IMG/VR virus record: IMGVR_UViG_3300033388_007730
Location: 124,001 to 188,000 of that record
Strand: one strand, 5' to 3'
Length of the DNA stretch: 64,000 nucleotides
Part shown: positions 22,238-60,041 of the stretch, in pieces
Layout of the letters: every line of letters begins with the position of its first letter
Position numbering within the stretch: the stretch's first letter is position 1
The notes under the pieces: model-generated
The model's database searches: none
The model's input: only the letters and a program-made list of their open reading frames with translations
What the model was told of the DNA's origin: nothing
Translations under genes and position numbers: made by a program

Positions 22238-22951
22238 ATGGAAGATACTATTATTATAGGAATGTCTGGTAAGAAACAATCTGGTAAAACTCTTTCTTGC
22301 GAAGATATTCAGAGAAAATATGGTCTATCACAATCTGCCAATTATCCTGTTACAACTATTTCTGCTACAGTAGCTCTATATAGTTTTGCTGATATGCTTA
22401 AACAAAAAGTATGTATGGATACTATGGGATTAACATATGAGCAATGTAATGGAACTAATGAACAAAAGAGCACTCCTACCAAATATAAATGGGAAAATTT
22501 ACCACGACAGATAAGATATGATAATAAATTGGGATCTAAATATGCATCTAATGGAGAAGTGTATCAACACATCTTACCAGAAGGATTTATGACTGCTAGA
22601 GAGATTTTACAGATAGTTGGGACAGACATATTTAGAAAGTATTTTGATGATGATATTTGGGTGAATGCTACTTTCAGAAAAATAGAGAAAGAGAAACCTA
22701 AAGTAGCAATTATTACAGATGCCAGGTTTCCAGGTGAGATCGACGCAATAATGAATAATGGTGGTTGTGTAATTCGTCTGTTAAGAGATGTCTGCGAAAG
22801 TGATTTTCATGAAAGTGAAACAGCATTAGATGATTATGATTTTACAAAGTGGGGAAATAGAGTTTGTATTATTGATAATCAACATATGAGTATAGAAGAA
22901 AAAAATGTTGTTGTATTTAAGTATCTAGAGGGAATAATCAAATGTCAATAA
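22238..22951 (+). CDS. Deoxynucleoside monophosphate kinase (phage type)
   Basis: SGKKQSGKT, SFADMLK, TAREILQIVGTD, IITDARF, HESE. Confidence 0.85.
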   Translation: MEDTIIIGMSGKKQSGKTLSCEDIQRKYGLSQSANYPVTTISATVALYSFADMLKQKVCMDTMGLTYEQCNGTNEQKSTPTKYKWENLPRQIRYDNKLGSKYASNGEVYQHILPEGFMTAREILQIVGTDIFRKYFDDDIWVNATFRKIEKEKPKVAIITDARFPGEIDAIMNNGGCVIRLLRDVCESDFHESETALDDYDFTKWGNRVCIIDNQHMSIEEKNVVVFKYLEGIIKCQ

Positions 22952-37735: not shown

Positions 37736-39403
37736 ATGGTAGATCAATTTACAAATATAGTAGGCGGATTTGAACAGTGTGAGCCACCTTTTTGTTCGCA
37801 AGATTTTCAAGTAGATGTTACGCAATTTGAGTGTAGTGGTGATATAGTTTATGTGAGCTGGATAATTACAGATCAATACAACAGAGGTATATCACCATCT
37901 TCAAATGTTGTTCAATATTCTTTGAATAGTAAAAATTTTAATAGTTCTCAACAAGTTGCTGTTAATAGTTTTAGTGGTAATTACTATAGTACTTATTTTG
38001 ATAAACCAGGAGAAGGATTGCTTTATATAAAAATAAAAGCACAAATAAATTTTATTTTTATAGAAGGTTATCCTGAAAACCATATTCCTCTAAATATGGA
38101 TACATGTGTAGATATAGCATCCGTAGCTGTGCCAGTTGGATTTTGTTCACAAACTCCATATGATGGTGTCCCTGTGTATATGGTAAAAAATATTTTGCCA
38201 ACGATAACTGACGACCCTGCTACTACATTTTATTTTGCAAGAGGAAATTATTGTTGGTTTGTAGATAAAAATCTTTATGATACTGAAATATCAATTGATG
38301 ATATTGATTATCCTAATTTGGCTGTTCTATGGGATGCTACAACTTCTATAGAAATTAAAAATAGTTGTGAAGCGTGTGATTTAACACTATCATGTCCATC
38401 ACCAGTTTGGACACCTGATCCTCTGTATCCCGGTGATTCTGGAAAAGATCAAGCAGAAATTTATTTGGAGTATAGCACTTGGACTGAGCGTGATGAAGTT
38501 ATAATTTATGGACCAGATCCACTTGGAGATTGTAGTAGAAATCAAATATGGAATTCTACTTGTGTAGGAACATGCAGAGGATATCAAGACTCTAGACAAG
38601 ATGATTGTGGTAATCCTGCTATTGATTGTGAAGATGGAGGAGAAGGACCAGGATTGTATTTAAGAAGACCGTCTCAATTTATAGTAACTGGATGTGATGG
38701 TTTTCACGACTATTATAATGGCACAGATTTTTGTGTAAAACAACTTTGTATTACTTTAAGAAAAGAGCAGATACCTATATCTGTACAAGTTATAGGAAAA
38801 TGCGATGACGCTAGTAGAACATATTGGTGTGCGTATGTAGAAGGACCTGATTTTACATATTGTAGATGTGGTAACGGAACTGATTGCGGAGCTATCATAG
38901 GTAGTTCTAGTAGTTCTAAGAGTTCAAGCTCAAGTTCTAAGAGTTCAAGCTCAAGTTCTTCTAAGAGTAGCTCAAGTTCTTCTAAGATTAGCTCATCAAG
39001 TAGTTCTAAAAGCAGCAGTTCTAGCTCGAAAAGTTCTAGCAGCTCTAGCTCGAAAAGTTCTAGCAGTTCTAGTTCAAATAGTTCTAGCTCAAGCTCTTCT
39101 AAGAGTAGTTCTTCAAGTAGTTCAAAGAGTTCTAGTAGCTCATCAAAGAGTAGTTCTTCTAGCAGTTCAGAGAGTTCAAGCAGCGATGAATCAGGTTCTG
39201 CCGCTGCTTTTCTGATCAATGATATGACCAATAAAGAGATAGAAGATATAATTAGTAAATTTTATAATGATAATCCTGGGATATTTGATGGTAAAACTCT
39301 TAGCGAAAAAGAAGATATTATTTTAGAATTTGTTGGGTCAGGTGAGATGATAGCGGAGGTGGCTCTTAGAATAGCGATTCGTGAGGGCATAGAAATAGCA
39401 TAG
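37736..39403 (+). CDS. Cys-rich protein with a long poly-Ser tract (probable virion or surface protein)
   Basis: Many Cys in an acidic domain, then about 94 aa of S/K repeat. Confidence 0.7.
   Translation: MVDQFTNIVGGFEQCEPPFCSQDFQVDVTQFECSGDIVYVSWIITDQYNRGISPSSNVVQYSLNSKNFNSSQQVAVNSFSGNYYSTYFDKPGEGLLYIKIKAQINFIFIEGYPENHIPLNMDTCVDIASVAVPVGFCSQTPYDGVPVYMVKNILPTITDDPATTFYFARGNYCWFVDKNLYDTEISIDDIDYPNLAVLWDATTSIEIKNSCEACDLTLSCPSPVWTPDPLYPGDSGKDQAEIYLEYSTWTERDEVIIYGPDPLGDCSRNQIWNSTCVGTCRGYQDSRQDDCGNPAIDCEDGGEGPGLYLRRPSQFIVTGCDGFHDYYNGTDFCVKQLCITLRKEQIPISVQVIGKCDDASRTYWCAYVEGPDFTYCRCGNGTDCGAIIGSSSSSKSSSSSSKSSSSSSSKSSSSSSKISSSSSSKSSSSSSKSSSSSSSKSSSSSSSNSSSSSSSKSSSSSSSKSSSSSSKSSSSSSSESSSSDESGSAAAFLINDMTNKEIEDIISKFYNDNPGIFDGKTLSEKEDIILEFVGSGEMIAEVALRIAIREGIEIA
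38903..39184 (+). repeat. Coding poly-Ser (SSSSSK)n low-complexity tract
   Basis: Mixed Ser codons AGT/TCT/TCA/AGC/TCG. Confidence 0.9.
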
Positions 39404-39407
39404 AAAT

Positions 39408-40220
39408 ATGAATTTTACAGATAAAGTGTATAAAAGATATAGTGATGCTAACGATATGGAAAGATATAGTGGGAAGATATATCTTAACTGTTGTGTTGGT
39501 GTTGAATATGATTTGGATTTATTAGAATACTCTATTAATTATTATAAAGAATTAGGAGTAGATGAATTTTTTATAATATTAAACACAGAAGATGAGAATA
39601 GTTTTAACCTCAAAAGAGCTATGAAAATATTAGACAAATATCCAGATATTCATAGGAGCATCTGGATAGGAGAGTATTATGGTTATATTAAAGGGGAAAA
39701 AGAGAAAAGTGTTGTTGAAAAAGTTATGGGAGAGGATGATTGGATAATTACTACTGATGTTGATGAATTTTTTGATTTTCCCATAGATTTAAGAAAATTA
39801 ATTGCCATTTGTGAAGATCAGGAGTGTCAAGTGGTTTATGGAAAAATAGTAGATAGGATTTCTTCAGATTATAAATTAAAAAAAGTAGATAAAACAAAAT
39901 CTCTGTGGGAACAATTCCCGATAAATGCTAAAATATATAACCAATTAAAAAGTAAAATATTATTACGCAGAAAAAAAATAGATATATATCATGGAGGTAA
40001 ATCTGGAGGACATCATTCATTTGTTGATCCAATGAGTGTTAAGATATATCCAGATATTTTAAAAGTGTATCATTTTCACTGGACAAATACTTTATTAGGG
40101 AAACTAGAAGAGAGAGTAGAAGTATGGAAAAAATATGGTAGGAATGATTGGAAGAGCCTTCAAGAAGTAATAGATGATTATAAAAAATATGGAATGTTAG
40201 TAGAGTCACAAAAATATTAA
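39408..40220 (+). CDS. Glycosyltransferase family 2-like (GT-A)
   Basis: YYKELGVDEF, WIITTDVDEF, VYHFHW. Confidence 0.75.
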   Translation: MNFTDKVYKRYSDANDMERYSGKIYLNCCVGVEYDLDLLEYSINYYKELGVDEFFIILNTEDENSFNLKRAMKILDKYPDIHRSIWIGEYYGYIKGEKEKSVVEKVMGEDDWIITTDVDEFFDFPIDLRKLIAICEDQECQVVYGKIVDRISSDYKLKKVDKTKSLWEQFPINAKIYNQLKSKILLRRKKIDIYHGGKSGGHHSFVDPMSVKIYPDILKVYHFHWTNTLLGKLEERVEVWKKYGRNDWKSLQEVIDDYKKYGMLVESQKY

Positions 40221-40277
40221 AGGTTATTAATTATTGATAATAGATATGATATTTTTTTTGTATTAAATTCAGGTTAT

Positions 40278-41009
40278 ATGGAGTTCGGCAAAATACTTTT
40301 AGGGTCTATTTTTGACAATTGCGATTTATCTAAAATAAATTGTATACATATTTCTGATACAGGATTAAAAGAATGCGATATAAGATATATTAAGAGTAAA
40401 TATAATAAAGTAAAGATTGTTAAAACTAATGTTATAACAGAATTTGAAACTGGAGGTAGATGGGGAGGAGATTGGCAGAAAAACATTAATAATAAAACAG
40501 AAGAATACTTAAAAGTTCTTGAATACAATATATACCCAGTAATTATGATTGATGCTGATTGTATGATTCTAAAGGATTTATATTGTTTAATAGATATTAA
40601 TTATGATATTCAATTATGTGTAAGGTATTCCGATAGCAGAAAAATTCCAAATTGTTTAGCATCATTTTTTATATGTAATAATGCTAAATCAGTAGAATTT
40701 ATAAAGAAATGGAGAAAAATTTATAAGCATTTAACATTAGCTTATAATAATAATCCTGTAGAAAGTAAATCTTTAGAAATTGCGAGAGATATATACTGTA
40801 AGAAGTATAAGTTTAAAAGTCATTGTGTCCAAGAAGTTGCTGGTGAACCGGATAATTATTTTGAAGATGAAGAATACCAAAAAAAAGTAAGTATTGTTCA
40901 TTTTAAGGCTAGAGGCGGATTTAATTCAGGACTAAAAAATAAGAGGATTATATTTGAGACGAGAACGAAACATTTTAGAGACGATATCCAAAAGTATTTA
41001 AAGGACTAA
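40278..41009 (+). CDS. Nucleotide-diphospho-sugar transferase (GT-A)
   Basis: SDTGL, VIMIDADC (DxD), ASFF, IVHFK. Confidence 0.7.
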   Translation: MEFGKILLGSIFDNCDLSKINCIHISDTGLKECDIRYIKSKYNKVKIVKTNVITEFETGGRWGGDWQKNINNKTEEYLKVLEYNIYPVIMIDADCMILKDLYCLIDINYDIQLCVRYSDSRKIPNCLASFFICNNAKSVEFIKKWRKIYKHLTLAYNNNPVESKSLEIARDIYCKKYKFKSHCVQEVAGEPDNYFEDEEYQKKVSIVHFKARGGFNSGLKNKRIIFETRTKHFRDDIQKYLKD

Positions 41010-41012
41010 TTA

Positions 41013-41405
41013 ATGAATTTTAAAGATATAATAAAAAAATATAGAGACAGGAATAAAAGCACAATATCTTCTGACAATGTGTCTCATGAGATGAATGCCA
41101 TTGTGCTTTATTCAACGTCTAATGCTCTATTTGATTTTAATGGTGTTATGATTGATGATGTTATGTCTTATGGCAAATCTAAGGGATACAACATAGATAA
41201 AATTGTTTTTCTTACCTCATATGATATAGAATTTACTGATGAGAATAAAGGTGTTAAAAAAGTAGACGATAATTCAATTAGGATTAGTCAGAATTATAGG
41301 ATGAAAAGTGATGCCAAAATAAGTATTATAGAAGAAGATGGAAAAGTAATTGCCAGGGTTTTTATGGGATCTTATATTATTGTAGGTAAAATACGTGAAA
41401 AATAA
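41013..41405 (+). CDS. Hypothetical protein
   Basis: 130-aa ORF overlapping the kinase start. Confidence 0.55.
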   Translation: MNFKDIIKKYRDRNKSTISSDNVSHEMNAIVLYSTSNALFDFNGVMIDDVMSYGKSKGYNIDKIVFLTSYDIEFTDENKGVKKVDDNSIRISQNYRMKSDAKISIIEEDGKVIARVFMGSYIIVGKIREK

Positions 41406-42861
41406 AATATCAAAAAAACGGTGGTTTTCTGAGGTAGTTCTGTATAATATGCGGGAGTCTATAATAATTACGAATGTCGATGGAGTAATAATTTATGTGA
41501 ACAAAGCAACAGAAAAATTATTTGGTTATACTGAAAAAGAAATGATAAATCAGAAACCAATAATGGTTAATGCTGAACCTGATGCAGAGAAAATCCAGGA
41601 ATCTATTTTAGAGGCTATGCTATGTGATGGGGAATGGAAAGGGCAGTTGCTTAATAGGAAAAAAAATGGTGATTTATTCACAGTTGAATTAACAATATGT
41701 CTTCTAAAAGATCTATATGATAACTTAGTTGGTTTTATAGGATATCAAAAAGATGTGACAAAAGCACTTAAGGCATCCAAGAAGATAAAAGAGAGTGAAG
41801 AGAAGTTTAGAAAAATTTTTCAAAATTCTCCTATGGGTATGCACTTGTATCAATTAAACATGGATGATGAGTTAGTTTTAATAGACTCTAATCCTGCTGC
41901 TGATGATTTTACAGGTATTAACACTGTTGATTTTATCGGAAAAACTCTCGAAGAAGCTTTTCCAGTTTTAATCGGTACAGAGATTCATGAAAGATACAAA
42001 ATGGCAGCTTCTAAAGGTATCTCTTGGAATACATCTTCTTTTACATACAAAGATGAAAGAATAAATGGTATTTATGATATATGGGCATATCAAATTTCAC
42101 GTAATCGTGTATTAGTACAGTTTGTTGAAGTAGTTAAGAGAGAACACGTTGAAGAGGAATTAAGAAATAGAAATCAAGAGTTAGAACAATTCGCATATGT
42201 AGCTTCTCATGACCTACAAGAACCATTGAGAGTAGTATCTAATTATTGTGAGATGTTGAGTGATAAATGCAAAACTTGTCCAAGAAGAGATAAAGATACT
42301 GAAAAGTGGTTGGAATATATAACGGAAGCTATTGATAGAATGAAAAATTTAATAAGGGAGTTATTGGATTTTTCTAGGGTAGGAAGAAAAGATAAATCAT
42401 TTGAGAGTTGTAATATAGGAGACATAATAGAAGATGTTAAAGATGATTTCAAGATATTGATAAAAGAGACTGATGCTGTTATAAAAGTAGAAGAGAACAT
42501 GCCATCAATAAATTGTATCGAATTCAGAATTAGACAATTATTTTATAATTTGATAAGTAATGCTATAAAATTTAGGGGAAAGAAAAAACCGCATATAGAT
42601 ATAAGCTTTTATAAAGAAGATGACGAATATGTATTTTGTGTTAAAGATAATGGGATAGGAATTTCACCAAAATATTTTGATAGAATCTTTGGAATATTTA
42701 AGAGATTGTATTCTAGAGAAGAATATCCTGGTACAGGAATAGGTCTTGCTTTATGTAAGAAAATAGTAGAAACTCATAATGGCAGAATATGGGTTGATTC
42801 TAAAGAGAATAAAGGGGCTTCTTTTTATTTTACCCTTTCTACAGTATTAGAAAGTGATTAA
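41395..42861 (+). CDS. Cytoplasmic PAS-PAS sensor histidine kinase
   Basis: Two PAS domains; H box FAYVASHDLQEPLR; N box NLISNAIKF; G1 DNGIGI; G2 GTGIGLALC. Confidence 0.93.
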   Translation: MKNKISKKRWFSEVVLYNMRESIIITNVDGVIIYVNKATEKLFGYTEKEMINQKPIMVNAEPDAEKIQESILEAMLCDGEWKGQLLNRKKNGDLFTVELTICLLKDLYDNLVGFIGYQKDVTKALKASKKIKESEEKFRKIFQNSPMGMHLYQLNMDDELVLIDSNPAADDFTGINTVDFIGKTLEEAFPVLIGTEIHERYKMAASKGISWNTSSFTYKDERINGIYDIWAYQISRNRVLVQFVEVVKREHVEEELRNRNQELEQFAYVASHDLQEPLRVVSNYCEMLSDKCKTCPRRDKDTEKWLEYITEAIDRMKNLIRELLDFSRVGRKDKSFESCNIGDIIEDVKDDFKILIKETDAVIKVEENMPSINCIEFRIRQLFYNLISNAIKFRGKKKPHIDISFYKEDDEYVFCVKDNGIGISPKYFDRIFGIFKRLYSREEYPGTGIGLALCKKIVETHNGRIWVDSKENKGASFYFTLSTVLESD

Positions 42862-42879
42862 AAAATATTATTTTTTTCT

Positions 42880-42907
42880 TTGAAAGTGATTATGAATATG
42901 GTATATT
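42880..42907 (+). promoter_or_regulatory. AAAGTGA-box promoter
   Basis: TTGAAAGTGATTATGAATATGGTATATT. Confidence 0.65.
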
Positions 42908-42935
42908 AAAGATTAATTGCTTATTTTATCGATAA

Positions 42936-42993
42936 GTTTAGTAGTGTAGAGTAGAGTTTAGTAAAGCAAAGTTTAGTAAAGTTTAGAGTTTAG
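42936..42993 (+). repeat. Five AGTTTAG heptamers in a 5' leader
   Basis: agtttag-tagtgtagagtag-agtttag-taaagcaa-agtttag-taa-agtttag-agtttag, running into the AGGAG RBS. Confidence 0.75.
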
Positions 42994-43003
42994 GAGATTC
43001 AAA

Positions 43004-43873
43004 ATGAGTTATGATCAAAAGATCAAGTCCGCGCGTCAAATCGTAGAAACCCACAATGAGAACGTAGATAATTTACATCAAGTGAATTTCGATCTGTTCA
43101 TCGCGACATTGAAAGAAATGGGTGGCACTTCCGAAGAAACCCTTAAAGCTTGTAGCTGGGAAGACTTGCAGGAATGTGGAGTTCCAAAACTTCTTGCAAG
43201 AAAATTCGCACATCTTTTCAGACAAGATAGCGACAAGGGTTTAACAAAGTCTGTTTATGTTTCTGATAAGAAAGCTAAGTCAATGACTATCAGTGAATTA
43301 TTGGAAAGATATAATCCAAGAGATATTAAAAATGCTGTTGGAAAAAGATTGGTAGATGTTTCTGATGGTAAGAGATGTATTGTTTTTGGTGACAATGGTA
43401 AAGTTAATGTAGCTGTTTCAGAAGGTCTTATCAATGATTCAATTGATGGTCACGATGAATTGACAAGTACATTCATCGATGGTATTCCAACTCCTGTTTA
43501 CAAAGTTGGAGAACGTCCTGATTGTTACACTGATGAAAATCCACTTTATCCTACAAGAGCATTAAGGTCTGGTGAGAACTGTGATCAGACTGGTCGCTCT
43601 TGGGATGGTATAGCTGTTGTTGTTCGTCAACTTCTTTATATAGCCAGGTCGCGAACAAATGAGTTGAAGATTAATTCTCTCGACGATGCTCATTCTGCTT
43701 TTGATAAAGCAGTGAGTGATAATGCTGAAAAGACAATCCGTCAGAGATATCCAAAAGCTTCATTGAAGTATGATGAATTATCATCAATTGGCAAACTTCC
43801 TGTCTTAAAGTTGAAGATTGGCAAAGAGTGTAGTCAAGCGAATGCACCTTTTGGTAAAAACAGAACTTTTTAA
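43004..43873 (+). CDS. Hypothetical protein with a SAM/HhH-like N-terminal segment
   Basis: SWEDLQECGVPKLLARK; has its own promoter and terminator. Confidence 0.65.
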   Translation: MSYDQKIKSARQIVETHNENVDNLHQVNFDLFIATLKEMGGTSEETLKACSWEDLQECGVPKLLARKFAHLFRQDSDKGLTKSVYVSDKKAKSMTISELLERYNPRDIKNAVGKRLVDVSDGKRCIVFGDNGKVNVAVSEGLINDSIDGHDELTSTFIDGIPTPVYKVGERPDCYTDENPLYPTRALRSGENCDQTGRSWDGIAVVVRQLLYIARSRTNELKINSLDDAHSAFDKAVSDNAEKTIRQRYPKASLKYDELSSIGKLPVLKLKIGKECSQANAPFGKNRTF

Positions 43874-43886
43874 TGATATTAACTGT

Positions 43887-43917
43887 AGAGTAGGCGGAGA
43901 AAATCCGTCTACTCTTT
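43887..43917 (+). terminator. Rho-independent terminator or attenuator hairpin
   Basis: AGAGTAGGCGGA-GAAAA-TCCGTCTACTCT then TT. Confidence 0.7.
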
Positions 43918-43935
43918 ATCTTTGGAGAAAACAAA

Positions 43936-45138
43936 ATGAGCACAATAATGTCAGTAAATAATTTAGAAATGGATTTGCGTATTGCCCCCAAGTTGAGTAA
44001 AGTTACAGATGCAGCTGGAGAAGAGGTTGCTCAAGGATTACCATTTGGAGTACAAACAAAGGTAAATGCTGTTGATGAGTATCCTGGTTGTCCTGATAAT
44101 TGGATGAATGGCTCAAATATAGTTAGTAGCTATTTCCTTGGAGTGGAAGAAGAAAAAGGTATGTGGTTAAATTTTAATACTTGTACTTCTCACACTCACG
44201 ATGTAGCAGTAATTGTCAGTGTTCAGGGTATCAATCCTGTAACTGGTCAAAAGATGGTTGGGGAAAATTCTTTGAGGCTAGAGAAGTATCAGAGTAAATG
44301 TCCTATTCATGATATTGATTTTAAGCAGGACAGGTTCTGTGAAGAGTGTGGATACAAATGGCCTGCCCAGAATTATATAGCTACTACTGGGACTCCGTGG
44401 GGATTATTCTGGTTAGATGGATTTAGAAACTCAGATGGAGTTGTGAGACAATATATCTTTACAGAAGAAGAGATAAAAGGAGTTGCTTCTCAGATGATAG
44501 GAGATGATAGGGTATTCGCTATTGGAATTGCTTTTTATCTTAGTAAGGAACCTAAGCCTGTACCAGAGAGAAGAAGCATGATGAGAAGCATAATGAGAAG
44601 CAGTGATCCTTGTGGGCAGAGTATCAGCAACTATGCAGGTTCTCCACCAGCATATATGGGGTATATAGATGAATCTAATTTAACCCAAAAATGTTCAAAA
44701 ATTGGTAGTCAAGTACCTGCAGTAAATTTTAGTTGTTCTGTCGGTGCTAGTGCTAATGATGATTTAGAACCCGTCGCTGGTAATCTTTGTTCTCTTCAAG
44801 GAGTTATTACTCCAGATGCTGCTGTTGAAGAACAAACAGCTGGAGATATCATAACTTCTAATCTTTATACTACTAATATAGATGTTGTTGAAGAAGTAGT
44901 AGCAGATGAATCAGTTGAACCTGTGATCCCTGTTAAGAAGTTAGAGGTTGGTGCTGGAGCAATGATTAATCAAAAGATTTATGTTGATACCAAAGAGATG
45001 GATCATTGGGAAGATAAACCTGCTGGAATGATTTATATGAATTACTGTGATAAAGAAATTTTGAAAAACATTTTGGCAAAAGGTAGAAGGAAAGAGAAAA
45101 AAGAAGGGTTCATGGAAGAGATTAAAGTTGGTAGTTAA
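43936..45138 (+). CDS. Conserved hypothetical protein (WLDG..DG.VRQ family) with an inserted Cys/His zinc ribbon
   Basis: GMWLNFN, GINPVTG, QNYI, WLDGFRNSDGVVRQY, GAGAMINQKIY; CPIH...CEECG insert. Confidence 0.65.
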   Translation: MSTIMSVNNLEMDLRIAPKLSKVTDAAGEEVAQGLPFGVQTKVNAVDEYPGCPDNWMNGSNIVSSYFLGVEEEKGMWLNFNTCTSHTHDVAVIVSVQGINPVTGQKMVGENSLRLEKYQSKCPIHDIDFKQDRFCEECGYKWPAQNYIATTGTPWGLFWLDGFRNSDGVVRQYIFTEEEIKGVASQMIGDDRVFAIGIAFYLSKEPKPVPERRSMMRSIMRSSDPCGQSISNYAGSPPAYMGYIDESNLTQKCSKIGSQVPAVNFSCSVGASANDDLEPVAGNLCSLQGVITPDAAVEEQTAGDIITSNLYTTNIDVVEEVVADESVEPVIPVKKLEVGAGAMINQKIYVDTKEMDHWEDKPAGMIYMNYCDKEILKNILAKGRRKEKKEGFMEEIKVGS

Positions 45139-45142
45139 TTAT

Positions 45143-45185
45143 AATATCCCCCAACATTCATTGTGATATTGGGGGATATTTTTTT
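45143..45185. terminator. Probable bidirectional terminator between convergent genes
   Basis: AATATCCCCCAA / TTGGGGGATATT stem followed by a T-tract. Confidence 0.75.
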
Positions 45186-45597
45186 ATATAGCTTTAAGTG
45201 TTTTTACTCTTTTTCTGCCATAAGTGGCACATCTTATGGCTCTTGTTAAGTCTTCATGTTTAACTTCATCTTTGATAAGGAAATCTTTTATTCCTAATGA
45301 GAATGCTTTTATTCCTAGACTATAATCTTCTAATCCGGTAAGAATTATTATAGGTATTTTTTTATTTTTTTGTTCTAAGAATTTATTAACTTCATTAATA
45401 GTATCTAATCCGTCTGTTTCAGGAAGGACTAAATCTAATATAATAACATCATATTCATTTTTTCCCAATTTTTCTAATGCTGCTTTTAAACAATCGCTTT
45501 CATCAGCAGTCATATCTGGAATTAGATTGGTTTGATTAATCCTTGTTATTGCTATATCTCTGTCTTCTTTACTATCATCTATAACTAGTACTTTCAT
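45184..45597 (-). CDS. Single-domain response regulator
   Basis: VLVIDDS, ILDLVLPETDG (phospho-Asp), IILTG, FLIK. Confidence 0.9.
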   Translation of the reverse strand: MKVLVIDDSKEDRDIAITRINQTNLIPDMTADESDCLKAALEKLGKNEYDVIILDLVLPETDGLDTINEVNKFLEQKNKKIPIIILTGLEDYSLGIKAFSLGIKDFLIKDEVKHEDLTRAIRCATYGRKRVKTLKAI

Positions 45598-45607
45598 TTT
45601 ACTCTCA

Positions 45608-46081
45608 CTATTTTATGTTGTCATTTTTTATGATATATAAATTTCCAGCGTTTGGGAGAACGGATGTTTTAAGCCAATACTCACCCATAGTTGCTATTTT
45701 TTCAAATAAGTTTTTAGTGCTAAAACTTTTTACTATGTATGAATTAGCATAAGCATCATATGATTTTTGGATATCTTCTTCTTCGCTAGAGTTACTGAAC
45801 ATTATAACTGGAATTACTTTATATTTTTTATCATTTTTTATTTTTTTTAATAGTTCATAACCGCCTATTTTTGGGAGATTTATATCTAGTATTATAAGAT
45901 CAGGGGTTTTTGCTTCTTTAAATTTATTTTTCTTAAATATGTATTCTAGGGCAGTTTGTCCATTTGAAATGTTAGTTATCTCTAATTTTATATCAGGGAT
46001 TCTGTGGAGAGCAGTATCTAATAAGGTGAAATCTGGCTCGTTATCTTCTATAGAAAGTATATTAAATGTAGTGTCTGTCAT
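45608..46081 (-). CDS. Single-domain response regulator, Rcp1-like
   Basis: IEDNEPD, PDLIILDINLP, IPVIMFSNS, ANSYIVK, EYWL. Confidence 0.9.
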   Translation of the reverse strand: MTDTTFNILSIEDNEPDFTLLDTALHRIPDIKLEITNISNGQTALEYIFKKNKFKEAKTPDLIILDINLPKIGGYELLKKIKNDKKYKVIPVIMFSNSSEEEDIQKSYDAYANSYIVKSFSTKNLFEKIATMGEYWLKTSVLPNAGNLYIIKNDNIK

Positions 46082-46123
46082 TGTTTATCCTTTATAGACG
46101 CAAAAAAAATAGCATTATATATA

Positions 46124-46153
46124 TATATTATGAATTTATTTTCTATTTCCTTT
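46124..46153 (-). promoter_or_regulatory. Candidate sigmaH-like promoter for the receiver pair
   Basis: Minus strand AAAGGA-N17-TAATATA. Confidence 0.35.
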
Positions 46154-46154
46154 G

Positions 46155-46183
46155 TGGAAAAGTGAAAAATAATATGGTAAAAT
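46155..46183 (+). promoter_or_regulatory. AAAGTGA-box promoter
   Basis: TGGAAAAGTGAAAAATAATATGGTAAAAT. Confidence 0.7.
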
Positions 46184-46226
46184 AGCGGTATGATTGTAAA
46201 AAGAGATTATTTTTGGAGAAAAGTAG

Positions 46227-47117
46227 ATGAAAGATGTTATTTTTGAGAAGTATGGGGCTTATGAGCCACAAATTGAATGTTTAGATATGGGATTTGTAAA
46301 ACTGTTAGATTGTATGCCAAGAGTATTGAGAGAAGAGGAAGATACTGCTGATTATGCGATAGGAGAAGCAGCCAGGCAAAGTTATAAAAGAGAGACAAAG
46401 ACAGTAGCAGATGATAAGACACTAATAAGATATTTAATGAGGCATACTCACACAAGCCCATTGGAGATGATAGAGTTTAAGTTCCATTGTAAATTACCTA
46501 TTTTTGTGGCGAGAGAAATGATACGTCATAGAACTGCTAATGTGAATGAGCTTAGTGGTAGATATTCTGAGATGCCAGAAGAATATTATATTCCAGGGGA
46601 GCTTAGAGTACAATCTTTAATAAATACACAAGGCTCTGAAGGATCTATTAGTGAAGGTTCAGTAGAGATGACAAAGGGTTTTATGAGATTACAATCTCAA
46701 GATGCTTTTAAATTCTATTATAGACTATTAGAGCAAGGTGTGGCAAGAGAACAGGCAAGAATAGTTTTGCCTCTTTCAACTTATACTGAGTGGTACTGGA
46801 AGATTGATTTACACAATTTACTTCATTTCCTTAATTTAAGATGTGATCACCATGCTCAACAGGAGATTAGAGTTTATGCTGATGCTATTCTGGATCTAAT
46901 TAAGCCTATAGTTCCTTGGACTGTATCAGCCTGGGAAGATTATAGTCCTTATCGCGGTGGAATGATATTAACCAGATTTGAGGTAGAGGCTATAAGGAAA
47001 AGGTGCTATAATACTAATACCATCGTTTCGGATATTGAGTCTTCAAATAAATTAGAACAGAGGGAATGGCAAGAAAAGGCTAAAAGACTGGGATTGGATG
47101 ATAATAGTCATCCATAG
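46227..47117 (+). CDS. thyX: Flavin-dependent thymidylate synthase
   Basis: HTSPLEM, RHRTANVNELSGRY signature, AREQARIVLP, HAQQEIR. Confidence 0.95.
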   Translation: MKDVIFEKYGAYEPQIECLDMGFVKLLDCMPRVLREEEDTADYAIGEAARQSYKRETKTVADDKTLIRYLMRHTHTSPLEMIEFKFHCKLPIFVAREMIRHRTANVNELSGRYSEMPEEYYIPGELRVQSLINTQGSEGSISEGSVEMTKGFMRLQSQDAFKFYYRLLEQGVAREQARIVLPLSTYTEWYWKIDLHNLLHFLNLRCDHHAQQEIRVYADAILDLIKPIVPWTVSAWEDYSPYRGGMILTRFEVEAIRKRCYNTNTIVSDIESSNKLEQREWQEKAKRLGLDDNSHP

Positions 47118-57195: not shown

Positions 57196-59568
57196 ATGGA
57201 AGATATAAATATCAAATCATTATTACAAGGTGGAATTCGTAAAGATCCAGAAGATGATAGAGATTTTATTTTTACAACACCACATATTCCTGATCATACT
57301 GTCTTGGGAAGTGCTGATTCTATTCCATTAAAAATAGATCATTCTAATAAGATGGGTTCGGTTAAGTTTCAAGGTGCGTTAGGATGCCATGATATTAGAA
57401 CAGAAATACTTACAGAAAAAGGTTGGAAACTATTTAAAGATTTGGATAAAGAAGAAAAAGTAGCTACCGTTAATCCTAATACCCATGAAATTGAATATCA
57501 AGAGCCAATTAATTATTTAGAATATGATTATGAAGGAGATATGTATTATTTTCACCATAAAAGTGGATTAGATGCTATGGTTACTCCTAATCATAAGATG
57601 TATGTCAAGAAATGGGATAATAAAAATATGACATTAAAAGAAGAATTTGAATTCATTGAAGCACAAAATATGGGTTGGTATTCTGGATTGTTGACAAAAA
57701 TTGATTGGGATGGGATCTCTCCCAAAACAATGAAAATGCCAGATGTTGAGATAGGACAAAGAAATGGAAGCAAAAAACAATCTATAAGAATAGGTAAAGA
57801 AATTGATACTACTAATTTCATTACATTTTTGGGATTATATTTAGCAGAGGGCTGTTGTTATCGTCCTGAGGGTAGTGGATCTTACAGAATTGAGATCGCC
57901 GCTAGTGACAATAATGATAGGAAAAATGAAGTTATTGAAATTATTGATGATTTGCCGTATAAATATACTATTTATCATGATAGGATAACAATATGGAATA
58001 AATCTTTATATACATTTCTTAAGCCTTTTGGGAATGTTTATACTAAGTCAGTACCAAGATTTGTTATGGATTTGAATAAAAAGGATATCGCTGCATTTAT
58101 GTATGGTTATTATTTAGGAGATGGATCTTTTCATGATAATGGGGCAAGGACAGGGTATTCGGTATCTGAACATTTAATTGATGATCTTCAAGAACTATCT
58201 TTGAAAATAGGGGTATATAGTAGGAAAAAAAGTAGATCACCTAGAATTGCATATATTAAAGGTAGAAAAATTTTTGGTAAAGAAAGTTATGAACTTCATG
58301 AAAGACAAATAGATACGAAGTTGTCGATAGATAGAAATAAATATTCATCCAAAGTTCCATATAATAATAAAGTATATTGTGTAGAAGTCCCTAATCACAT
58401 ACTTATTACTAGAAGGGGTGGTTGTATTCTAATTTCTGGCAATTCGTGCGTAGCGTTTGCAGCTTGTGCTTTAAAAGAGTGGCAAGAAACAATAGAACAT
58501 GAAAAGGAAGTTTTGGCAGGGAAAAAAGATCATAGAGAAGGTAAAGAATATAATTTGTCTGAACAGTGGATTTATTGGAATTGTAAAAAAATAGATCCAT
58601 GGCCTAATTCTGAAGGAACAAATCTGAGATCAGCTATGAGAGTATTAAATAAGATTGGAGTTCCTACCGAACAAGCTTGGGGTTACACTGATGATAAGGT
58701 GAACATTGGTGAACCTGAAAGCTGGGCATATATGATAGCAAGGTGGAATTTAATAGGGTCTTATTGGAGAATATCAGGATTAGATCAAATTAAAAAAGCA
58801 TTGATCGAGAGTCCTATTATTATTGGGATGGCTTGTTTTAGAGAAATGTATGGTAATTTAGAACATGGTTTAATACCTTATCCTGCTAATCCTGGAGAAG
58901 TAATGTCTCATCATGCTGTTTGTGTTGTTGGTTATGATGAAGAGAAAAAACTCTTAAAATTTAAAAATAGTTGGTCTAAGTTCTGGGGAGATGTTGGTTA
59001 TGGATATATACCTTATGATTATGTAAGAGATTTTGTATGGGATGCGTGGATTGCTAGAGATATTAGTGTAACTCATGAAATGCTTGAAGGTACTAGATTA
59101 TTGGTAGGTGCAGATGTACCAACAGTAATAGAGATAGCTGAGACACCACTTATACAAAAAGATACAGAAGAGAATTTTTCTTTTGTAGGATTTAAGTATC
59201 CTTCTCTTTTAGATACTTTTTCTATTATTAAAGATATTTTTGGAGTTCCAGAAATAGAGATATTTAGAGCTTCTAAAAAGGTGGGAGTTAAATTAGAAGA
59301 TTCTTCATCTATTAACTTATTCTGTAAAAAATATTTTGCTGAGTTTAGAAAAGAATCTGTAAAGAAATATGGATTTGAAGTCGATGTTATTAAAGTGGAT
59401 GATGAATATCCAATTATTGGTATTTGTTTGTGTGAAAAAGAAATTAGTGATAAATTTGATGAAAATCAGATAAAGATAGAAGATGTAATGAAAAAAGTGG
59501 TTGGCATGAGAGATATATTGGCTCTTGGCAAAGATATAATAATTTACAATGGTGTGAGAAAATATTAA
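57196..59568 (+). CDS. Papain-family (C1A) cysteine protease containing an intein
   Basis: Spliced motif QGALGSCVAFA, LSEQWIY, HAVCVVGYD, KNSWSKFWGDVGYG. Confidence 0.9.
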   Translation: MEDINIKSLLQGGIRKDPEDDRDFIFTTPHIPDHTVLGSADSIPLKIDHSNKMGSVKFQGALGCHDIRTEILTEKGWKLFKDLDKEEKVATVNPNTHEIEYQEPINYLEYDYEGDMYYFHHKSGLDAMVTPNHKMYVKKWDNKNMTLKEEFEFIEAQNMGWYSGLLTKIDWDGISPKTMKMPDVEIGQRNGSKKQSIRIGKEIDTTNFITFLGLYLAEGCCYRPEGSGSYRIEIAASDNNDRKNEVIEIIDDLPYKYTIYHDRITIWNKSLYTFLKPFGNVYTKSVPRFVMDLNKKDIAAFMYGYYLGDGSFHDNGARTGYSVSEHLIDDLQELSLKIGVYSRKKSRSPRIAYIKGRKIFGKESYELHERQIDTKLSIDRNKYSSKVPYNNKVYCVEVPNHILITRRGGCILISGNSCVAFAACALKEWQETIEHEKEVLAGKKDHREGKEYNLSEQWIYWNCKKIDPWPNSEGTNLRSAMRVLNKIGVPTEQAWGYTDDKVNIGEPESWAYMIARWNLIGSYWRISGLDQIKKALIESPIIIGMACFREMYGNLEHGLIPYPANPGEVMSHHAVCVVGYDEEKKLLKFKNSWSKFWGDVGYGYIPYDYVRDFVWDAWIARDISVTHEMLEGTRLLVGADVPTVIEIAETPLIQKDTEENFSFVGFKYPSLLDTFSIIKDIFGVPEIEIFRASKKVGVKLEDSSSINLFCKKYFAEFRKESVKKYGFEVDVIKVDDEYPIIGICLCEKEISDKFDENQIKIEDVMKKVVGMRDILALGKDIIIYNGVRKY
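57385..58443 (+). mobile_element. Intein (353 aa) with LAGLIDADG endonuclease at the protease active site
   Basis: QGALG|CHDIRTEILT ... VYCVEVPNH...ISGN|SCVAF; VTPNHKM; FLGLYLAEG and YYLGDG. Confidence 0.93.
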
Positions 59569-59629: not shown

Positions 59630-60011
59630 GGGGACGACAGGATTGACTGGATAGGTAGAAAATTGAATTGCATGTCAGAGATGGTAGTTGGCTCTGTAAA
59701 AAATCTACTAAAAAGTTTAATTGCAAACAGTTACGCAATGGCTGCTTAAGCAGCAGGAGGGTGGCATAGCCTACCTTCCACCGATGTCTGTAAGGGAGTT
59801 TCCTGCTGGAACTTACAGGCTAATTTAGGCAGGATAGCCGAGAAACATTTTCTCATGGTGTGATTGGCGACAAGTCCCGATAAGGGGATGAGATAGCGAA
59901 AGTTAGGGTTAGTCCGTTGTTCCTAACATAGTGAAAAAAAAACAACGGACTATACATGTAGATGTTTGATTTGAAATATCACAGGACGAGGCTTCAATGC
60001 CTCCGTCTCCA
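59630..60011 (+). ncRNA. ssrA: tmRNA; tag (A)ANSYAMAA at 59723-59749
   Basis: 5' GGGGACG pairs with 3' CGTCTCC-A with G3:U; T-arm GAGGC-TTCAAT-GCCTC; GCATGT/ACATGT helix; resume codon GCA; tag ends AA*. Confidence 0.92.
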
Positions 60012-60041
60012 TTATGATGAAGTTTTTTTAAGGATGTAATA

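What the first reader, a model, noticed from the sequence alone, without database searches (positions are those of the whole stretch)
41395..46081. Complete two-component signalling set in a phage-like genome, with no DNA-binding output
Seen: a soluble PAS-PAS histidine kinase with intact H, N and G boxes, and two single-domain receivers with intact phospho-Asp, on the opposite strand and separated from the kinase by two genes. Known: the SHDLQEPLR kinase class typically occurs with an Rcp1-like receiver plus a second receiver. Inference: a captured three-gene set kept intact after rearrangement, letting the phage sense intracellular state or drain phosphate from host pathways.
Basis: partly seen in the sequence, partly recalled or inferred. 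Interest (0 to 1): 0.62.

Follow-up and report, generated by a model that had tools for sequence, protein, structure and literature searches.

The report
Two-component signalling set in huge phages
A clade of very large (about 0.3-0.55 Mb) uncultivated phages carries its own complete bacterial-type sensor kinase plus two small phospho-receiver proteins, inherited vertically under purifying selection, which suggests these phages sense conditions during infection by a pathway whose output is still unknown.

Summary
Window 41395-42861 (+) encodes a soluble 488-aa kinase: PAS-A, a degenerate second PAS, HisKA and HATPase_c, with intact H, N, G1, F and G2 boxes. 45608-46081 (-) and 45184-45597 (-) encode two receiver-only proteins with the full acidic pocket, Asp, Thr/Ser and Lys.

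The contig is an IMG/VR virus record of 219 kb (CheckV 44% complete). The same layout, kinase, two core genes, an inverted RR2-RR1 pair, then ThyX or ThyA, recurs in 11 distinct huge-phage contigs of up to 548 kb. They form one clade on the backbone tree, and their kinases form one clade. dN/dS is about 0.15.

RR1 is of the Rcp1/RcpA type. The kinase core is of the bacteriophytochrome/HK853 type. Bacterial relatives sit in an operon of kinase, Rcp-like RR and REC-kinase. The phage set therefore looks like one captured operon, rearranged, with the third gene reduced to its receiver.

Sensor domains differ between phages: PAS, GAF, or TM-Cache-TM. No receiver in a complete relative carries an output domain.

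Function is inferred: a working phosphotransfer pathway that acts through protein contacts. The two genes in between are older clade core genes, not demonstrably part of it. This is a new variant of a known kind, of moderate to good interest.

The parts
41395..42861 (+). Sensor histidine kinase, 488 aa, soluble. Domains: PAS-A (residues 14-123), degenerate PAS-like region (about 131-250), HisKA/DHp (263-329, His272 at nt 42208-42210), HATPase_c (377-482).
   Evidence: Pfam. Motif positions. No TM segment. The core is invariant at the H, N, G1, F and G2 boxes in 8 aligned phage genomes. Core dN/dS is 0.13-0.21. The best solved relatives are 8F71 (3e-44) and bacteriophytochrome kinase modules (1.5e-35).
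45608..46081 (-). RR1: single-domain receiver of the Rcp1/RcpA (phytochrome response regulator) type, 157 aa. Phospho-acceptor Asp66 lies at nt 45884-45886.
   Evidence: Pfam Response_reg 2e-20. PDB by sequence: RcpA 1K68 at 7e-28 and Rcp1 1I3C at 2e-22, against CheY at about 1e-9. E12, D13, D66 and K118 are invariant, and the T/S at 97-98 nearly so, in 11 genomes (that output numbers residues one lower). dN/dS is 0.14.
45184..45597 (-). RR2: second single-domain receiver, 137 aa. Phospho-acceptor Asp55 lies at nt 45433-45435. It lies directly downstream of RR1 on the minus strand.
   Evidence: Pfam Response_reg 5e-18. D8, D55, T87 and K109 are invariant in 11 genomes (numbering offset by one). 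dN/dS is 0.15. Its HMM best matches the N-terminal REC of the third gene (REC-HisKA-HATPase) in bacterial HK/Rcp-like operons.
41013..41405 (+). Small gene 'pre' (130 aa) whose end overlaps the kinase start by 11 nt. Function unknown.
   Evidence: It lies directly upstream of the kinase, overlapping or abutting it, in 10 of 11 kinase-bearing genomes. A weak homologue also occurs in a relative without the kinase (L027), so it is probably backbone.
43004..43873 (+). A289: conserved clade core gene of unknown function. The N-terminal 78 residues are HhH/SAM-like. It has its own promoter-like element and a long C-poor repeat leader.
   Evidence: No Pfam match. 116 metagenomic homologues, none with an informative name. 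AF2 model pLDDT 82. Weak fold matches to HhH glycosylase and Rad51 N-terminal domains (best Z 7.0, rmsd 2.6 over 69 residues). Present next to B400 in all 31 clade loci, with or without the signalling genes.
43936..45138 (+). B400: conserved clade core gene of unknown function. A beta-sandwich N-terminal domain with a Cys/His cluster, a low-complexity linker and a conserved C-terminal segment.
   Evidence: No Pfam or PHROG match. 402 homologues, on contigs of up to 584 kb. AF2 pTM 0.65, no fold match (Foldseek E > 0.09, VIA Z < 5). Atlas clusters are labelled 90-93% Viruses/Uroviricota.
45139..45183 (.). Convergent gap between B400 and RR2 holding a G+C-rich perfect hairpin flanked by T/A runs. 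It looks like a bidirectional terminator.
   Evidence: Read directly from the sequence. An analogous hairpin of different sequence sits at the same place in 10 of 11 genomes.
46082..46226 (.). Divergent intergenic region between RR1 and ThyX. It contains a + strand phage promoter-like motif for ThyX (AAAGTGAAA at 46159-46168, followed by TAAAAT) and, on the other strand, a TATAAT-like element and an AGGA ribosome site before RR1.
   Evidence: The AAAGTGAAA motif occurs 14 times on the + strand of the record, 8 of them in the 8.8% of the record that is intergenic. It therefore belongs to ThyX, not to the receivers.
46227..47117 (+). ThyX (flavin-dependent thymidylate synthase), the conserved right-hand neighbour of the block.
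   Evidence: Pfam Thy1 4e-56. Replaced by ThyA in one relative that keeps the signalling block.

Best explanation
This is a working, phage-owned His-Asp phosphotransfer pathway. An ancestor of one subclade of huge phages captured a bacterial three-gene operon once. That operon was a sensor kinase with an SHDLQEPLR H box, an Rcp1-like single receiver, and a REC-kinase. Only the receiver of the third gene was kept, and the receiver pair came to lie inverted on the far side of two older core genes.

In this phage the kinase is cytoplasmic. Its PAS-A domain is of the flavin-type (MmoS/NifL/LOV-like) sequence class but lacks the LOV cysteine. The likeliest input is therefore a redox or small-ligand cue inside the infected cell. 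The kinase would autophosphorylate on His272 and pass the phosphoryl group to Asp66 of RR1, and probably to Asp55 of RR2.

Neither receiver has an output domain, so the output must be a phosphorylation-dependent protein contact with a phage or host protein, or competition with the host's own relay.

Shown: gene integrity, family assignments, conservation, single origin, purifying selection, sensor swapping.
Inferred: phosphotransfer, the nature of the signal, the output.
For: Integrity: all catalytic motifs of the kinase and both receivers are present and invariant in 8 to 11 genomes.

Phage ownership:
- The record is an IMG/VR virus of 219 kb. A relative of 548 kb is rated 100% complete.
- 219 of 232 ORFs lie on one strand, and coding density is 91%.
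- Phage-type replication genes are present: UvsX-like recombinase, DnaB-like helicase, split DNA polymerase, clamp loader, RNA ligase-HNH. There is also a tmRNA.
- GC, GC3 and codon use of the three genes match the record.

Conservation: the same layout occurs in 11 distinct contigs.

Single origin and vertical descent:
- The 11 form one clade on an A289+B400 tree (SH-aLRT 98, one change of state, 0 of 500 shuffles as low).
- Their kinase cores form one clade of 57 that contains no named cellular protein (SH-aLRT 95).

Selection, window against its nearest relative: RR1 0.14, RR2 0.15, kinase core 0.15, ThyX 0.165, with dS 0.35-0.93.

Origin: 13 of 18 bacterial loci around RR1 homologues read HK, RR1-like, REC-kinase on one strand. 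The closest ones carry the HDLQEPL H box.

Family: RR1 is nearest RcpA/Rcp1, and the kinase core is nearest bacteriophytochrome kinase modules.

Input: PAS-A is nearest MmoS, 3LYX and short-LOV/NifL PAS domains.

Co-fold of the kinase core dimer with RR1: ipSAE 0.57 against a best control of 0.00, rated 'weak support'. At 0.60 or under, only 5 of 78 solved complexes and all 4 passing mismatches fell in this range. The runs agree in at least 86% of contacts, and the partner's pLDDT is at least 81. Kinase-receiver complexes are solved, so the pass may come from the model's memory.
Against: - No expression, phosphorylation or partner data exist. No public run holding the sequence was listed.
- The kinase and the receivers are in separate, oppositely oriented transcription units, so co-expression is not assured.
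- The host is unknown.
- Which receiver is cognate is not resolved. The co-fold support is weak and cannot tell family members apart.
- I could not find capsid, terminase, sheath or baseplate genes with four Pfam models in this record or in the complete relative. 'Phage' therefore rests on IMG/VR and CheckV labels, replication genes and genome style.
- The flavin assignment of PAS-A rests on sequence class only.
Confidence: 0.6

Rival explanations
1. Interference rather than a private pathway. The phage receivers act mainly as phosphate sinks or decoys for host kinases of the same SHDLQEPLR class. Alternatively, the phage kinase acts as kinase or phosphatase on host receivers, rewiring a host HK / Rcp-like / REC-kinase relay during infection.
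For: Bacteria of many phyla carry the homologous three-gene relay. RR2 corresponds in position to the receiver that controls the second kinase there, so a free copy could compete with it. Both phage receivers lack outputs. The receivers are transcribed separately from the kinase.
Against: The phage keeps its own kinase core under selection as strong as on the receivers, which a pure sink would not need. The closest cellular RR1 is only 42% identical, so no mimicry of a particular host protein is evident. The host, and whether it has such a relay, is unknown.
Confidence: 0.2
2. The two genes lying between kinase and receivers (A289, with an HhH/SAM-like N-terminus, and B400) are the output of the pathway. 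The phosphorylated receivers would bind them and so regulate DNA-related or structural functions.
For: The signalling genes flank exactly this pair in all 11 genomes, while other genes come and go only between the kinase and A289. The N-terminal domain of A289 weakly resembles DNA-binding HhH modules.
Against: The A289-B400 pair is older and occurs without any kinase or receiver within 7-8 kb in 20 other distinct clade members. It has its own promoter-like element and a leader shared with those members. The fold matches are weak (Z 7 or less). No interaction was tested.
Confidence: 0.08
3. The region is cellular DNA, either a mis-assembled chimera or a non-viral giant element, or else a decaying passenger with no function.
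For: Four Pfam models of virion or packaging genes found nothing in the record or in its complete relative. The very large ORFs have no PHROG match. GenBank phages hold no close relative.
Against: A chimera is excluded by the identical junctions in 11 independent assemblies from different samples and by the uniform composition. Decay is excluded by intact motifs and a dN/dS of about 0.15. IMG/VR, CheckV and the Atlas taxon labels (Uroviricota) point to tailed phages.
Confidence: 0.05

Closest known systems
Cyanobacterial phytochrome two-component pairs Cph1-Rcp1 and CphA-RcpA (PDB 1I3C, 1K68), and bacteriophytochrome kinase / receiver pairs (PDB 8AVV, 9YS3, 8UPH)
   Same: The transmitter core has the same H-box class. 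It is partnered by a stand-alone receiver with the Rcp-type C-terminal extension, and RR1's best solved relatives are exactly these proteins. Those receivers also have no output domain. From my own knowledge, their downstream targets are poorly known.
   Different: No bilin-binding PAS-GAF-PHY photosensory module is present. The input here is a flavin-type PAS without the LOV cysteine plus a degenerate PAS. The genes are phage-borne, split into opposite strands, and accompanied by a second free receiver.
Bacterial three-gene relays: sensor HK (HDLQEPL), then Rcp-like RR, then REC-(PAS)-HisKA-HATPase, as seen here in Elusimicrobia, Segetibacter, Roseibacillus and Holophagaceae loci (L053-L069)
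   Same: The same three homologous modules occur in the same functional order. This is the likely source of the phage set.
   Different: In bacteria all three genes lie on one strand and the third gene carries a second kinase. The phage keeps only its receiver, inverts the receiver pair and separates it from the kinase by two phage core genes. Identity to any cellular RR1 is at most 42%.
Phage phiCDHM1 agr cassette (a phage-borne AgrC histidine kinase; Hargreaves et al. 2014, cited in PMC6324907) and other phage sensing devices such as VP882 VqmA (PMC10426928)
   Same: A phage carries host-type sensory genes, presumably to read conditions during infection.
   Different: As I recall it, the phiCDHM1 cassette has a kinase but no response regulator. 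VqmA is a one-component receptor. Here a kinase and two receivers are present together and are conserved across a clade.
Phage-borne spo0A homologues (PMC10294663)
   Same: A fragment of a two-component protein retained by phages.
   Different: It is the mirror image. Those phages keep the DNA-binding effector without the receiver. These phages keep receivers without any effector.
Hybrid histidine kinases of the brown-alga virus EsV-1 (PMC6324907)
   Same: A large DNA virus that encodes several His-Asp signalling proteins.
   Different: A eukaryotic virus with hybrid kinases that have fused receivers, and of unrelated ancestry.
cREC receiver-like domains of jumbo phages (PF20274; PMC7824862)
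   Same: The same record also carries one, beside a NADAR gene.
   Different: cREC is described as never linked to histidine kinases. RR1 and RR2 are canonical Response_reg receivers and do not belong to it.

Membership tests
HisKA-type (class I) sensor histidine kinase | DHp domain with the phospho-accepting His in an H box | tested here: met
   HisKA E 9e-14. SHDLQEPLR at 271-279, invariant in 8 genomes.
HisKA-type (class I) sensor histidine kinase | GHKL ATP-binding domain with N, G1, F and G2 boxes | tested here: met
   HATPase_c E 6e-27. N box 385-393, DNGIGI 418-423, F box 432-439, GTGIGL 446-451.
HisKA-type (class I) sensor histidine kinase | ATP-dependent autophosphorylation | not testable with these tools
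   Needs purified protein.
CheY-like receiver domain (Response_reg, PF00072): RR1 and RR2 | Acidic pocket, phospho-acceptor Asp, conserved Thr/Ser and Lys | tested here: met
   RR1: E12 D13, D66, S/T 96-98, K118. RR2: D7 D8, D55, T87, K109. Invariant or nearly so in 11 genomes.
CheY-like receiver domain (Response_reg, PF00072): RR1 and RR2 | Phosphotransfer from the neighbouring kinase | tested here: inconclusive
   Co-fold of the kinase core dimer with RR1: ipSAE 0.57 against a best control of 0.00, rated weak support. RR2 was not tested. A biochemical assay is needed.
Rcp1/RcpA-type phytochrome response regulators (RR1) | Closest sequence kinship to Rcp proteins, stand-alone receiver with a C-terminal extension | tested here: met
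   RcpA 7e-28, Rcp1 2e-22, RcpB 1.5e-19, against CheY at about 1e-9. The alignment runs to residue 143-145, including the conserved YWL segment.
Rcp1/RcpA-type phytochrome response regulators (RR1) | Partner kinase is a (bacterio)phytochrome with a bilin-binding PAS-GAF-PHY module | tested here: not met
   The kinase has only PAS domains. Neither this kinase nor six relatives scanned has a PHY domain, and one relative has a weak GAF.
LOV blue-light sensor (PAS-A) | Flavin-binding PAS with the adduct-forming Cys in the NCRFL motif | tested here: not met
   PAS-A aligns with the MmoS, NifL and short-LOV class, but the equivalent stretch reads NQKPIMVNAE with no Cys. Flavin binding itself was not tested.
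Huge / jumbo tailed phage | Genome above 200 kb with virus classification | tested here: met
   The record is 219 kb at 44% estimated completeness. Relatives measure 298-548 kb and are classed as viruses by IMG/VR. Atlas clusters of B400 are 90-93% Uroviricota.
Huge / jumbo tailed phage | Capsid, portal, terminase and tail genes | tested here: inconclusive
   Terminase_6N, Terminase_6C, Phage_sheath_1 and GPW_gp25 found nothing in the record or in the complete relative. These profiles are probably too distant, and this was not an exhaustive scan.

The most novel reading that the evidence does not exclude
A whole lineage of huge phages runs its own phosphorelay as an infection-state decision circuit. 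The conserved transmitter and the two free receivers would be a fixed 'bus', and the sensor end would be swapped between phages: cytoplasmic flavin-type PAS, GAF, or membrane-bound periplasmic Cache. Different phages would then read different host or environmental cues, with the receivers acting on a phage or host protein partner of a kind not yet described. That would make it the first virus-encoded complete two-component pathway with an autonomous role in the viral programme.
Probability: 0.3. Interest if true: 0.8.

Novelty: new variant of a known kind. Interest (0 to 1): 0.6.

Why it matters
Phages are known to eavesdrop on hosts with one-component receptors, arbitrium peptides or single captured kinases. 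I found no description of a complete kinase-plus-receiver set that is vertically inherited across a clade of 0.3-0.55 Mb phages. The huge-phage survey I checked (PMC7162821) and a jumbo-phage review (PMC7824862) do not mention one.

If active, it shows that very large phages carry regulatory autonomy of a cellular kind. It would also give a compact natural system, one kinase and two output-less receivers, in which to find what Rcp-type single-domain receivers actually bind. As far as I know that question is still open for the cellular systems too.

The swapping of sensor modules on a constant transmitter is a natural experiment in the rewiring of inputs.

Tried and rejected
- GenBank phage collection: the kinase, RR1, a topoisomerase and an AAA-ATPase gave only distant matches of about 30% or matches to contaminated records. 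No cultivated relative was found.
- Direct IMG/VR search with the single kinase sequence found nothing. RR1 and a B400 alignment did work.
- Virion and packaging Pfam models (PF03237, PF17289, PF04984, PF04965) found no match in G000 or G001. Thirteen large ORFs, among them five of 1,059-1,957 aa, had no PHROG match.
- Public sequencing runs: none was listed for the 4.7-kb stretch. No read laying was done, so there is no expression evidence.
- The conserved TTTCACTTT element upstream of RR1 looked at first like a receiver-specific operator. It is the reverse strand of a general + strand phage promoter-like motif that serves ThyX, so that reading was rejected.
- The generic sigma-70 and terminator scan was not above chance (37 sites against 30.4 +/- 5.3).
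- The third receiver-like ORF in the record is a cREC domain beside NADAR, and is not part of this system.
- Fold searches for B400 returned only generic beta-sandwiches. For A289 they returned only a weak HhH/SAM-like N-terminus. No function was assigned.
- A profile search with RR2 against 1.84 billion proteins put long multi-receiver signalling proteins at the top. Their scores sum several receivers, so the ranking does not decide where RR2 came from.
- Records behind L026-L028 could not be searched whole.
- Paper searches by sample accession found nothing.
- No alternative genetic code was needed (91% coding under table 11).

Full report
**1. What is in the sequence**

The stretch 41395-46081 holds five open frames.

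The kinase (41395-42861, + strand, 488 aa, GTG start) has one strong PAS domain at residues 14-121, HisKA at 263-329 and HATPase_c at 377-482. It has no hydrophobic segment. Its catalytic motifs are complete: SHDLQEPLR with His272, the N box, DNGIGI, the F box and GTGIGL. It does align with a clear PAS-B in relatives.

On the minus strand lie RR1 (45608-46081, 157 aa) and RR2 (45184-45597, 137 aa). Each consists of a receiver domain only. Each has the acidic pair, the acceptor Asp (D66 and D55), Thr/Ser and Lys.

Between the kinase and the receivers lie two + strand genes with no Pfam family. I call them A289 (43004-43873) and B400 (43936-45138).

**2. Where the window comes from**

The window is bases 124001-188000 of an IMG/VR virus record of 219,188 bp that CheckV rates 44% complete. 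Several properties fit a huge phage:

- GC content is about 31% throughout.
- 219 of 232 crude ORFs are on one strand, and coding density is 91% under the standard code.
- PHROG matches are phage replication and nucleotide genes: split DNA polymerase, DnaB-like helicase, primase, clamp loader, UvsX-like recombinase, RNA ligase with HNH, a tRNA nucleotidyltransferase, and ThyX.
- A tmRNA gene lies at 59630-60014.

The weak point is that four Pfam models for terminase, sheath and baseplate found nothing, here or in a complete relative. The very large ORFs have no PHROG match either. GenBank phages hold no close relative. 'Phage' thus rests on the IMG/VR and CheckV labels, the Uroviricota labels of the B400 clusters in the ESM Atlas, and the genome style.

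**3. The block is conserved, not a local accident**

RR1 led to a 547,943-bp IMG/VR contig rated 100% complete. Kinase homologues led to further contigs of 276-394 kb, and B400 homologues to IMG/VR contigs of 298-461 kb.

In 11 distinct contigs the order is the same: small gene 'pre', kinase, zero to two variable genes, A289, B400, then RR2 and RR1 on the opposite strand, then ThyX. In one contig ThyA replaces ThyX.

All kinase and receiver motifs are invariant. GC, GC3 and codon use of the three genes match the rest of the record. A chimera or a recent pick-up is therefore excluded.

**4. One origin and vertical descent**

The A289-B400 pair is much more widespread than the signalling genes. 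Twenty further distinct clade members have the pair with no kinase or receiver within 7-8 kb.

On a tree of A289 plus the conserved parts of B400, the 11 kinase-bearing genomes are one side of a single branch (SH-aLRT 98). One change of state suffices, and 0 of 500 label shuffles reach a count as low.

On a tree of 120 kinase cores, the 11 phage-context kinases fall in one clade of 57 that holds no named cellular protein (SH-aLRT 95). Its neighbour group holds Bacteroidota kinases. The trees are unrooted, so gain against loss is not formally decided. A single gain in the ancestor of the subclade is the simplest reading.

**5. Selection**

Between the window and its nearest relative (dS 0.35-0.93), dN/dS values are as follows.

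| Gene | dN/dS |
|---|---|
| RR1 | 0.14 |
| RR2 | 0.15 |
| Kinase core | 0.15 |
| ThyX | 0.165 |
| A289 | 0.10 |

The sensor part of the kinase evolves much faster or is replaced. Across the phages the sensor part is one of the following:

- PAS-A alone
- PAS-B alone
- both PAS domains
- a predicted N-terminal membrane segment plus two PAS domains
- PAS plus a weak GAF
- TM-sCache_2-TM-PAS, the classical layout of a periplasm-sensing membrane kinase
- an unrecognised N-terminus

The transmitter and receivers are thus constant while the input varies.

**6. Family assignment and likely source**

By sequence against solved structures, RR1 is nearest the phytochrome response regulators RcpA (7e-28), Rcp1 (2e-22) and RcpB, far ahead of CheY. 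The kinase core is nearest 8F71 and bacteriophytochrome kinase modules, then HK853. RR2 is nearest the receiver of a dual-sensor kinase.

A scan of one genome per prokaryote species with the RR1 alignment found cellular relatives of at most 42% identity. I examined 18 of these loci. Thirteen read sensor kinase, RR1-like receiver, then a gene that starts with an RR2-like receiver followed by a second kinase module, all on one strand. The closest (Elusimicrobia, Segetibacter, Roseibacillus) carry the HDLQEPL or HDLKEPL H box. Pfam confirms REC-(PAS)-HisKA-HATPase for the third gene.

However, the phage copy of the third gene is cut down to its receiver. A library-wide profile search with RR2 did not settle this point, because multi-receiver proteins dominate the ranking.

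**7. Transcription context**

- The kinase start overlaps the end of 'pre' by 11 nt.
- A289 has its own promoter-like element and a long C-poor repeat leader, which is shared with clade members that lack the signalling genes.
- A strong hairpin follows A289.
- A G+C-rich hairpin fills the convergent gap between B400 and RR2 in 10 of 11 genomes.
- The conserved TTTCACTTT element upstream of RR1 is the reverse of AAAGTGAAA-N10-13-TAtAAT. This + strand motif is enriched in intergenic DNA (8 of 14 copies in 8.8% of the record), and here it serves ThyX.

The receivers therefore form their own small minus-strand unit, one of the few in the record. The kinase, the A289-B400 pair and the receivers are probably three separate transcripts.

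**8. How it most likely works**

The most economical reading is a functional phosphotransfer pathway owned by the phage.

PAS-A belongs to the sequence class of MmoS, NifL and short-LOV domains. It keeps the Asn and Gln positions typical of that class but has no LOV cysteine. A flavin- or ligand-based cytoplasmic cue is therefore my best guess for this phage. Its relatives with Cache or membrane anchors would read other cues.

Transfer to RR1 is expected from the operon ancestry. A co-fold of the kinase-core dimer with RR1 scored ipSAE 0.57 against 0.00 for the best control, which the tool rates as weak support and which may reflect memory of solved kinase-receiver complexes.

The complete relative has no receiver with an output domain and no second kinase. 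The output must therefore be a protein contact, or interference with a host relay.

A role for A289 or B400 as output is possible but unlikely, since the pair predates the signalling genes. Their folds gave no function. A289 has a weak HhH/SAM-like N-terminus, and B400 is a beta-sandwich with no match.

**9. Comparison with what is known, and novelty**

Phage-borne sensing is known. Examples are VP882 VqmA, the phiCDHM1 agr cassette with a kinase, and phage spo0A fragments without a receiver. Large eukaryotic viruses such as EsV-1 carry hybrid kinases.

The huge-phage survey PMC7162821 does not mention kinases or response regulators in its main text. The jumbo-phage review PMC7824862 discusses only the unrelated cREC domain, one of which is also present in this record.

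I therefore rate this a new variant of a known kind: a canonical two-component set, phage-inherited, with a truncated relay, split orientation and modular inputs.

The host is unknown and the hints conflict. The kinase's sister group and the best RR1 match are Bacteroidota, but Shine-Dalgarno use is frequent (45% of crude starts against a 12.6% background).

**10. Limits**

- There is no expression or biochemical evidence.
- No run was listed for the sequence, and no reads were laid.
- Virion genes were not identified.
- The bacterial operon survey was seeded by RR1 patterns and is small.
- Trees were made by the quick method and are unrooted.

Noticed in passing
window 59630-60014 (+): A full-length tmRNA gene (Rfam RF00023, 108 bits, E 3e-41) that ARAGORN missed. 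ARAGORN also found no tRNA gene in the whole 219-kb record.
   Followed up: partly
window 16540, 21045, 27494, 46159, 52733, 54839 (+); G000:C1:52146 and 64255; variant at window about 42880: A + strand promoter-like motif, AAAGTGAAA followed 10-13 nt later by TAtAAT. There are 14 copies in the record, none on the other strand, and 8 of them lie in the 8.8% of DNA that is intergenic. The geometry recalls T4 middle (MotA-box) promoters. It may mark one temporal class of phage genes, ThyX and A289 among them.
   Followed up: partly
window 42930-43003, and the same place in L005/L029, L008, L010, L011, L023-L027, L030-L050: The 5' leader of A289 is a C-poor tract of short tandem repeats (GTTTAG, TAGAG and AGTAG types) that ends at the ribosome site, often preceded by a hairpin. 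It is conserved in kind, though not in sequence, across nearly all 26 clade members looked at. It may be a translational enhancer of a highly expressed gene.
   Followed up: partly
G000:C1:92824-93190 (+) (L003:1495-1860), with a NADAR gene at L003:387-899; G001:C1:381297-381536: A cREC_REC domain protein (PF20274, E 1.5e-11) lies close to a NADAR-domain gene (PF08719, E 3e-51). This is the NAD/ADP-ribose-linked receiver-like family described for jumbo phages, and it is unrelated to the kinase system.
   Followed up: yes
L031:4147-6252 (+) (IMGVR_UViG_3300024259_002152): A phage kinase of the same clade with the layout TM, sCache_2, TM, PAS, HisKA, HATPase_c. This is a membrane sensor with a periplasmic ligand-binding domain encoded by a 351-kb phage contig.
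   Followed up: partly
window 37736-39403 (+): A 555-aa ORF with a long C-terminal run of (SSSSSSK)-type serine repeats. The complementary strand gives a spurious 172-aa Leu/Glu-rich ORF.
   Followed up: no
window 39408-41009 (+): Two glycosyltransferase-like genes (Glyco_tranf_2_4 and, weakly, Nucleotid_trans) are inserted upstream of 'pre' in this phage. The relatives examined lack them at that place.
   Followed up: no
window 22942-25647 and 57196-59568 (+); L025:12908-15007: Oversized replication and nucleotide-metabolism genes with intein- or homing-endonuclease-like inserts: a clamp loader of 901 aa, and a 790-aa ORF with ribonucleotide-reductase- and thymidylate-synthase-PHROG segments plus a peptidase. 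In one relative the ORF at the ThyX position (699 aa) shows only weak intein and LAGLIDADG hits.
   Followed up: no
P0232 (593 aa) and L008:9669-10271: One B400 homologue is fused to VWA domains, and a separate VWA gene sits between the kinase and A289 in one relative. This hints that B400 works with VWA-type proteins.
   Followed up: no
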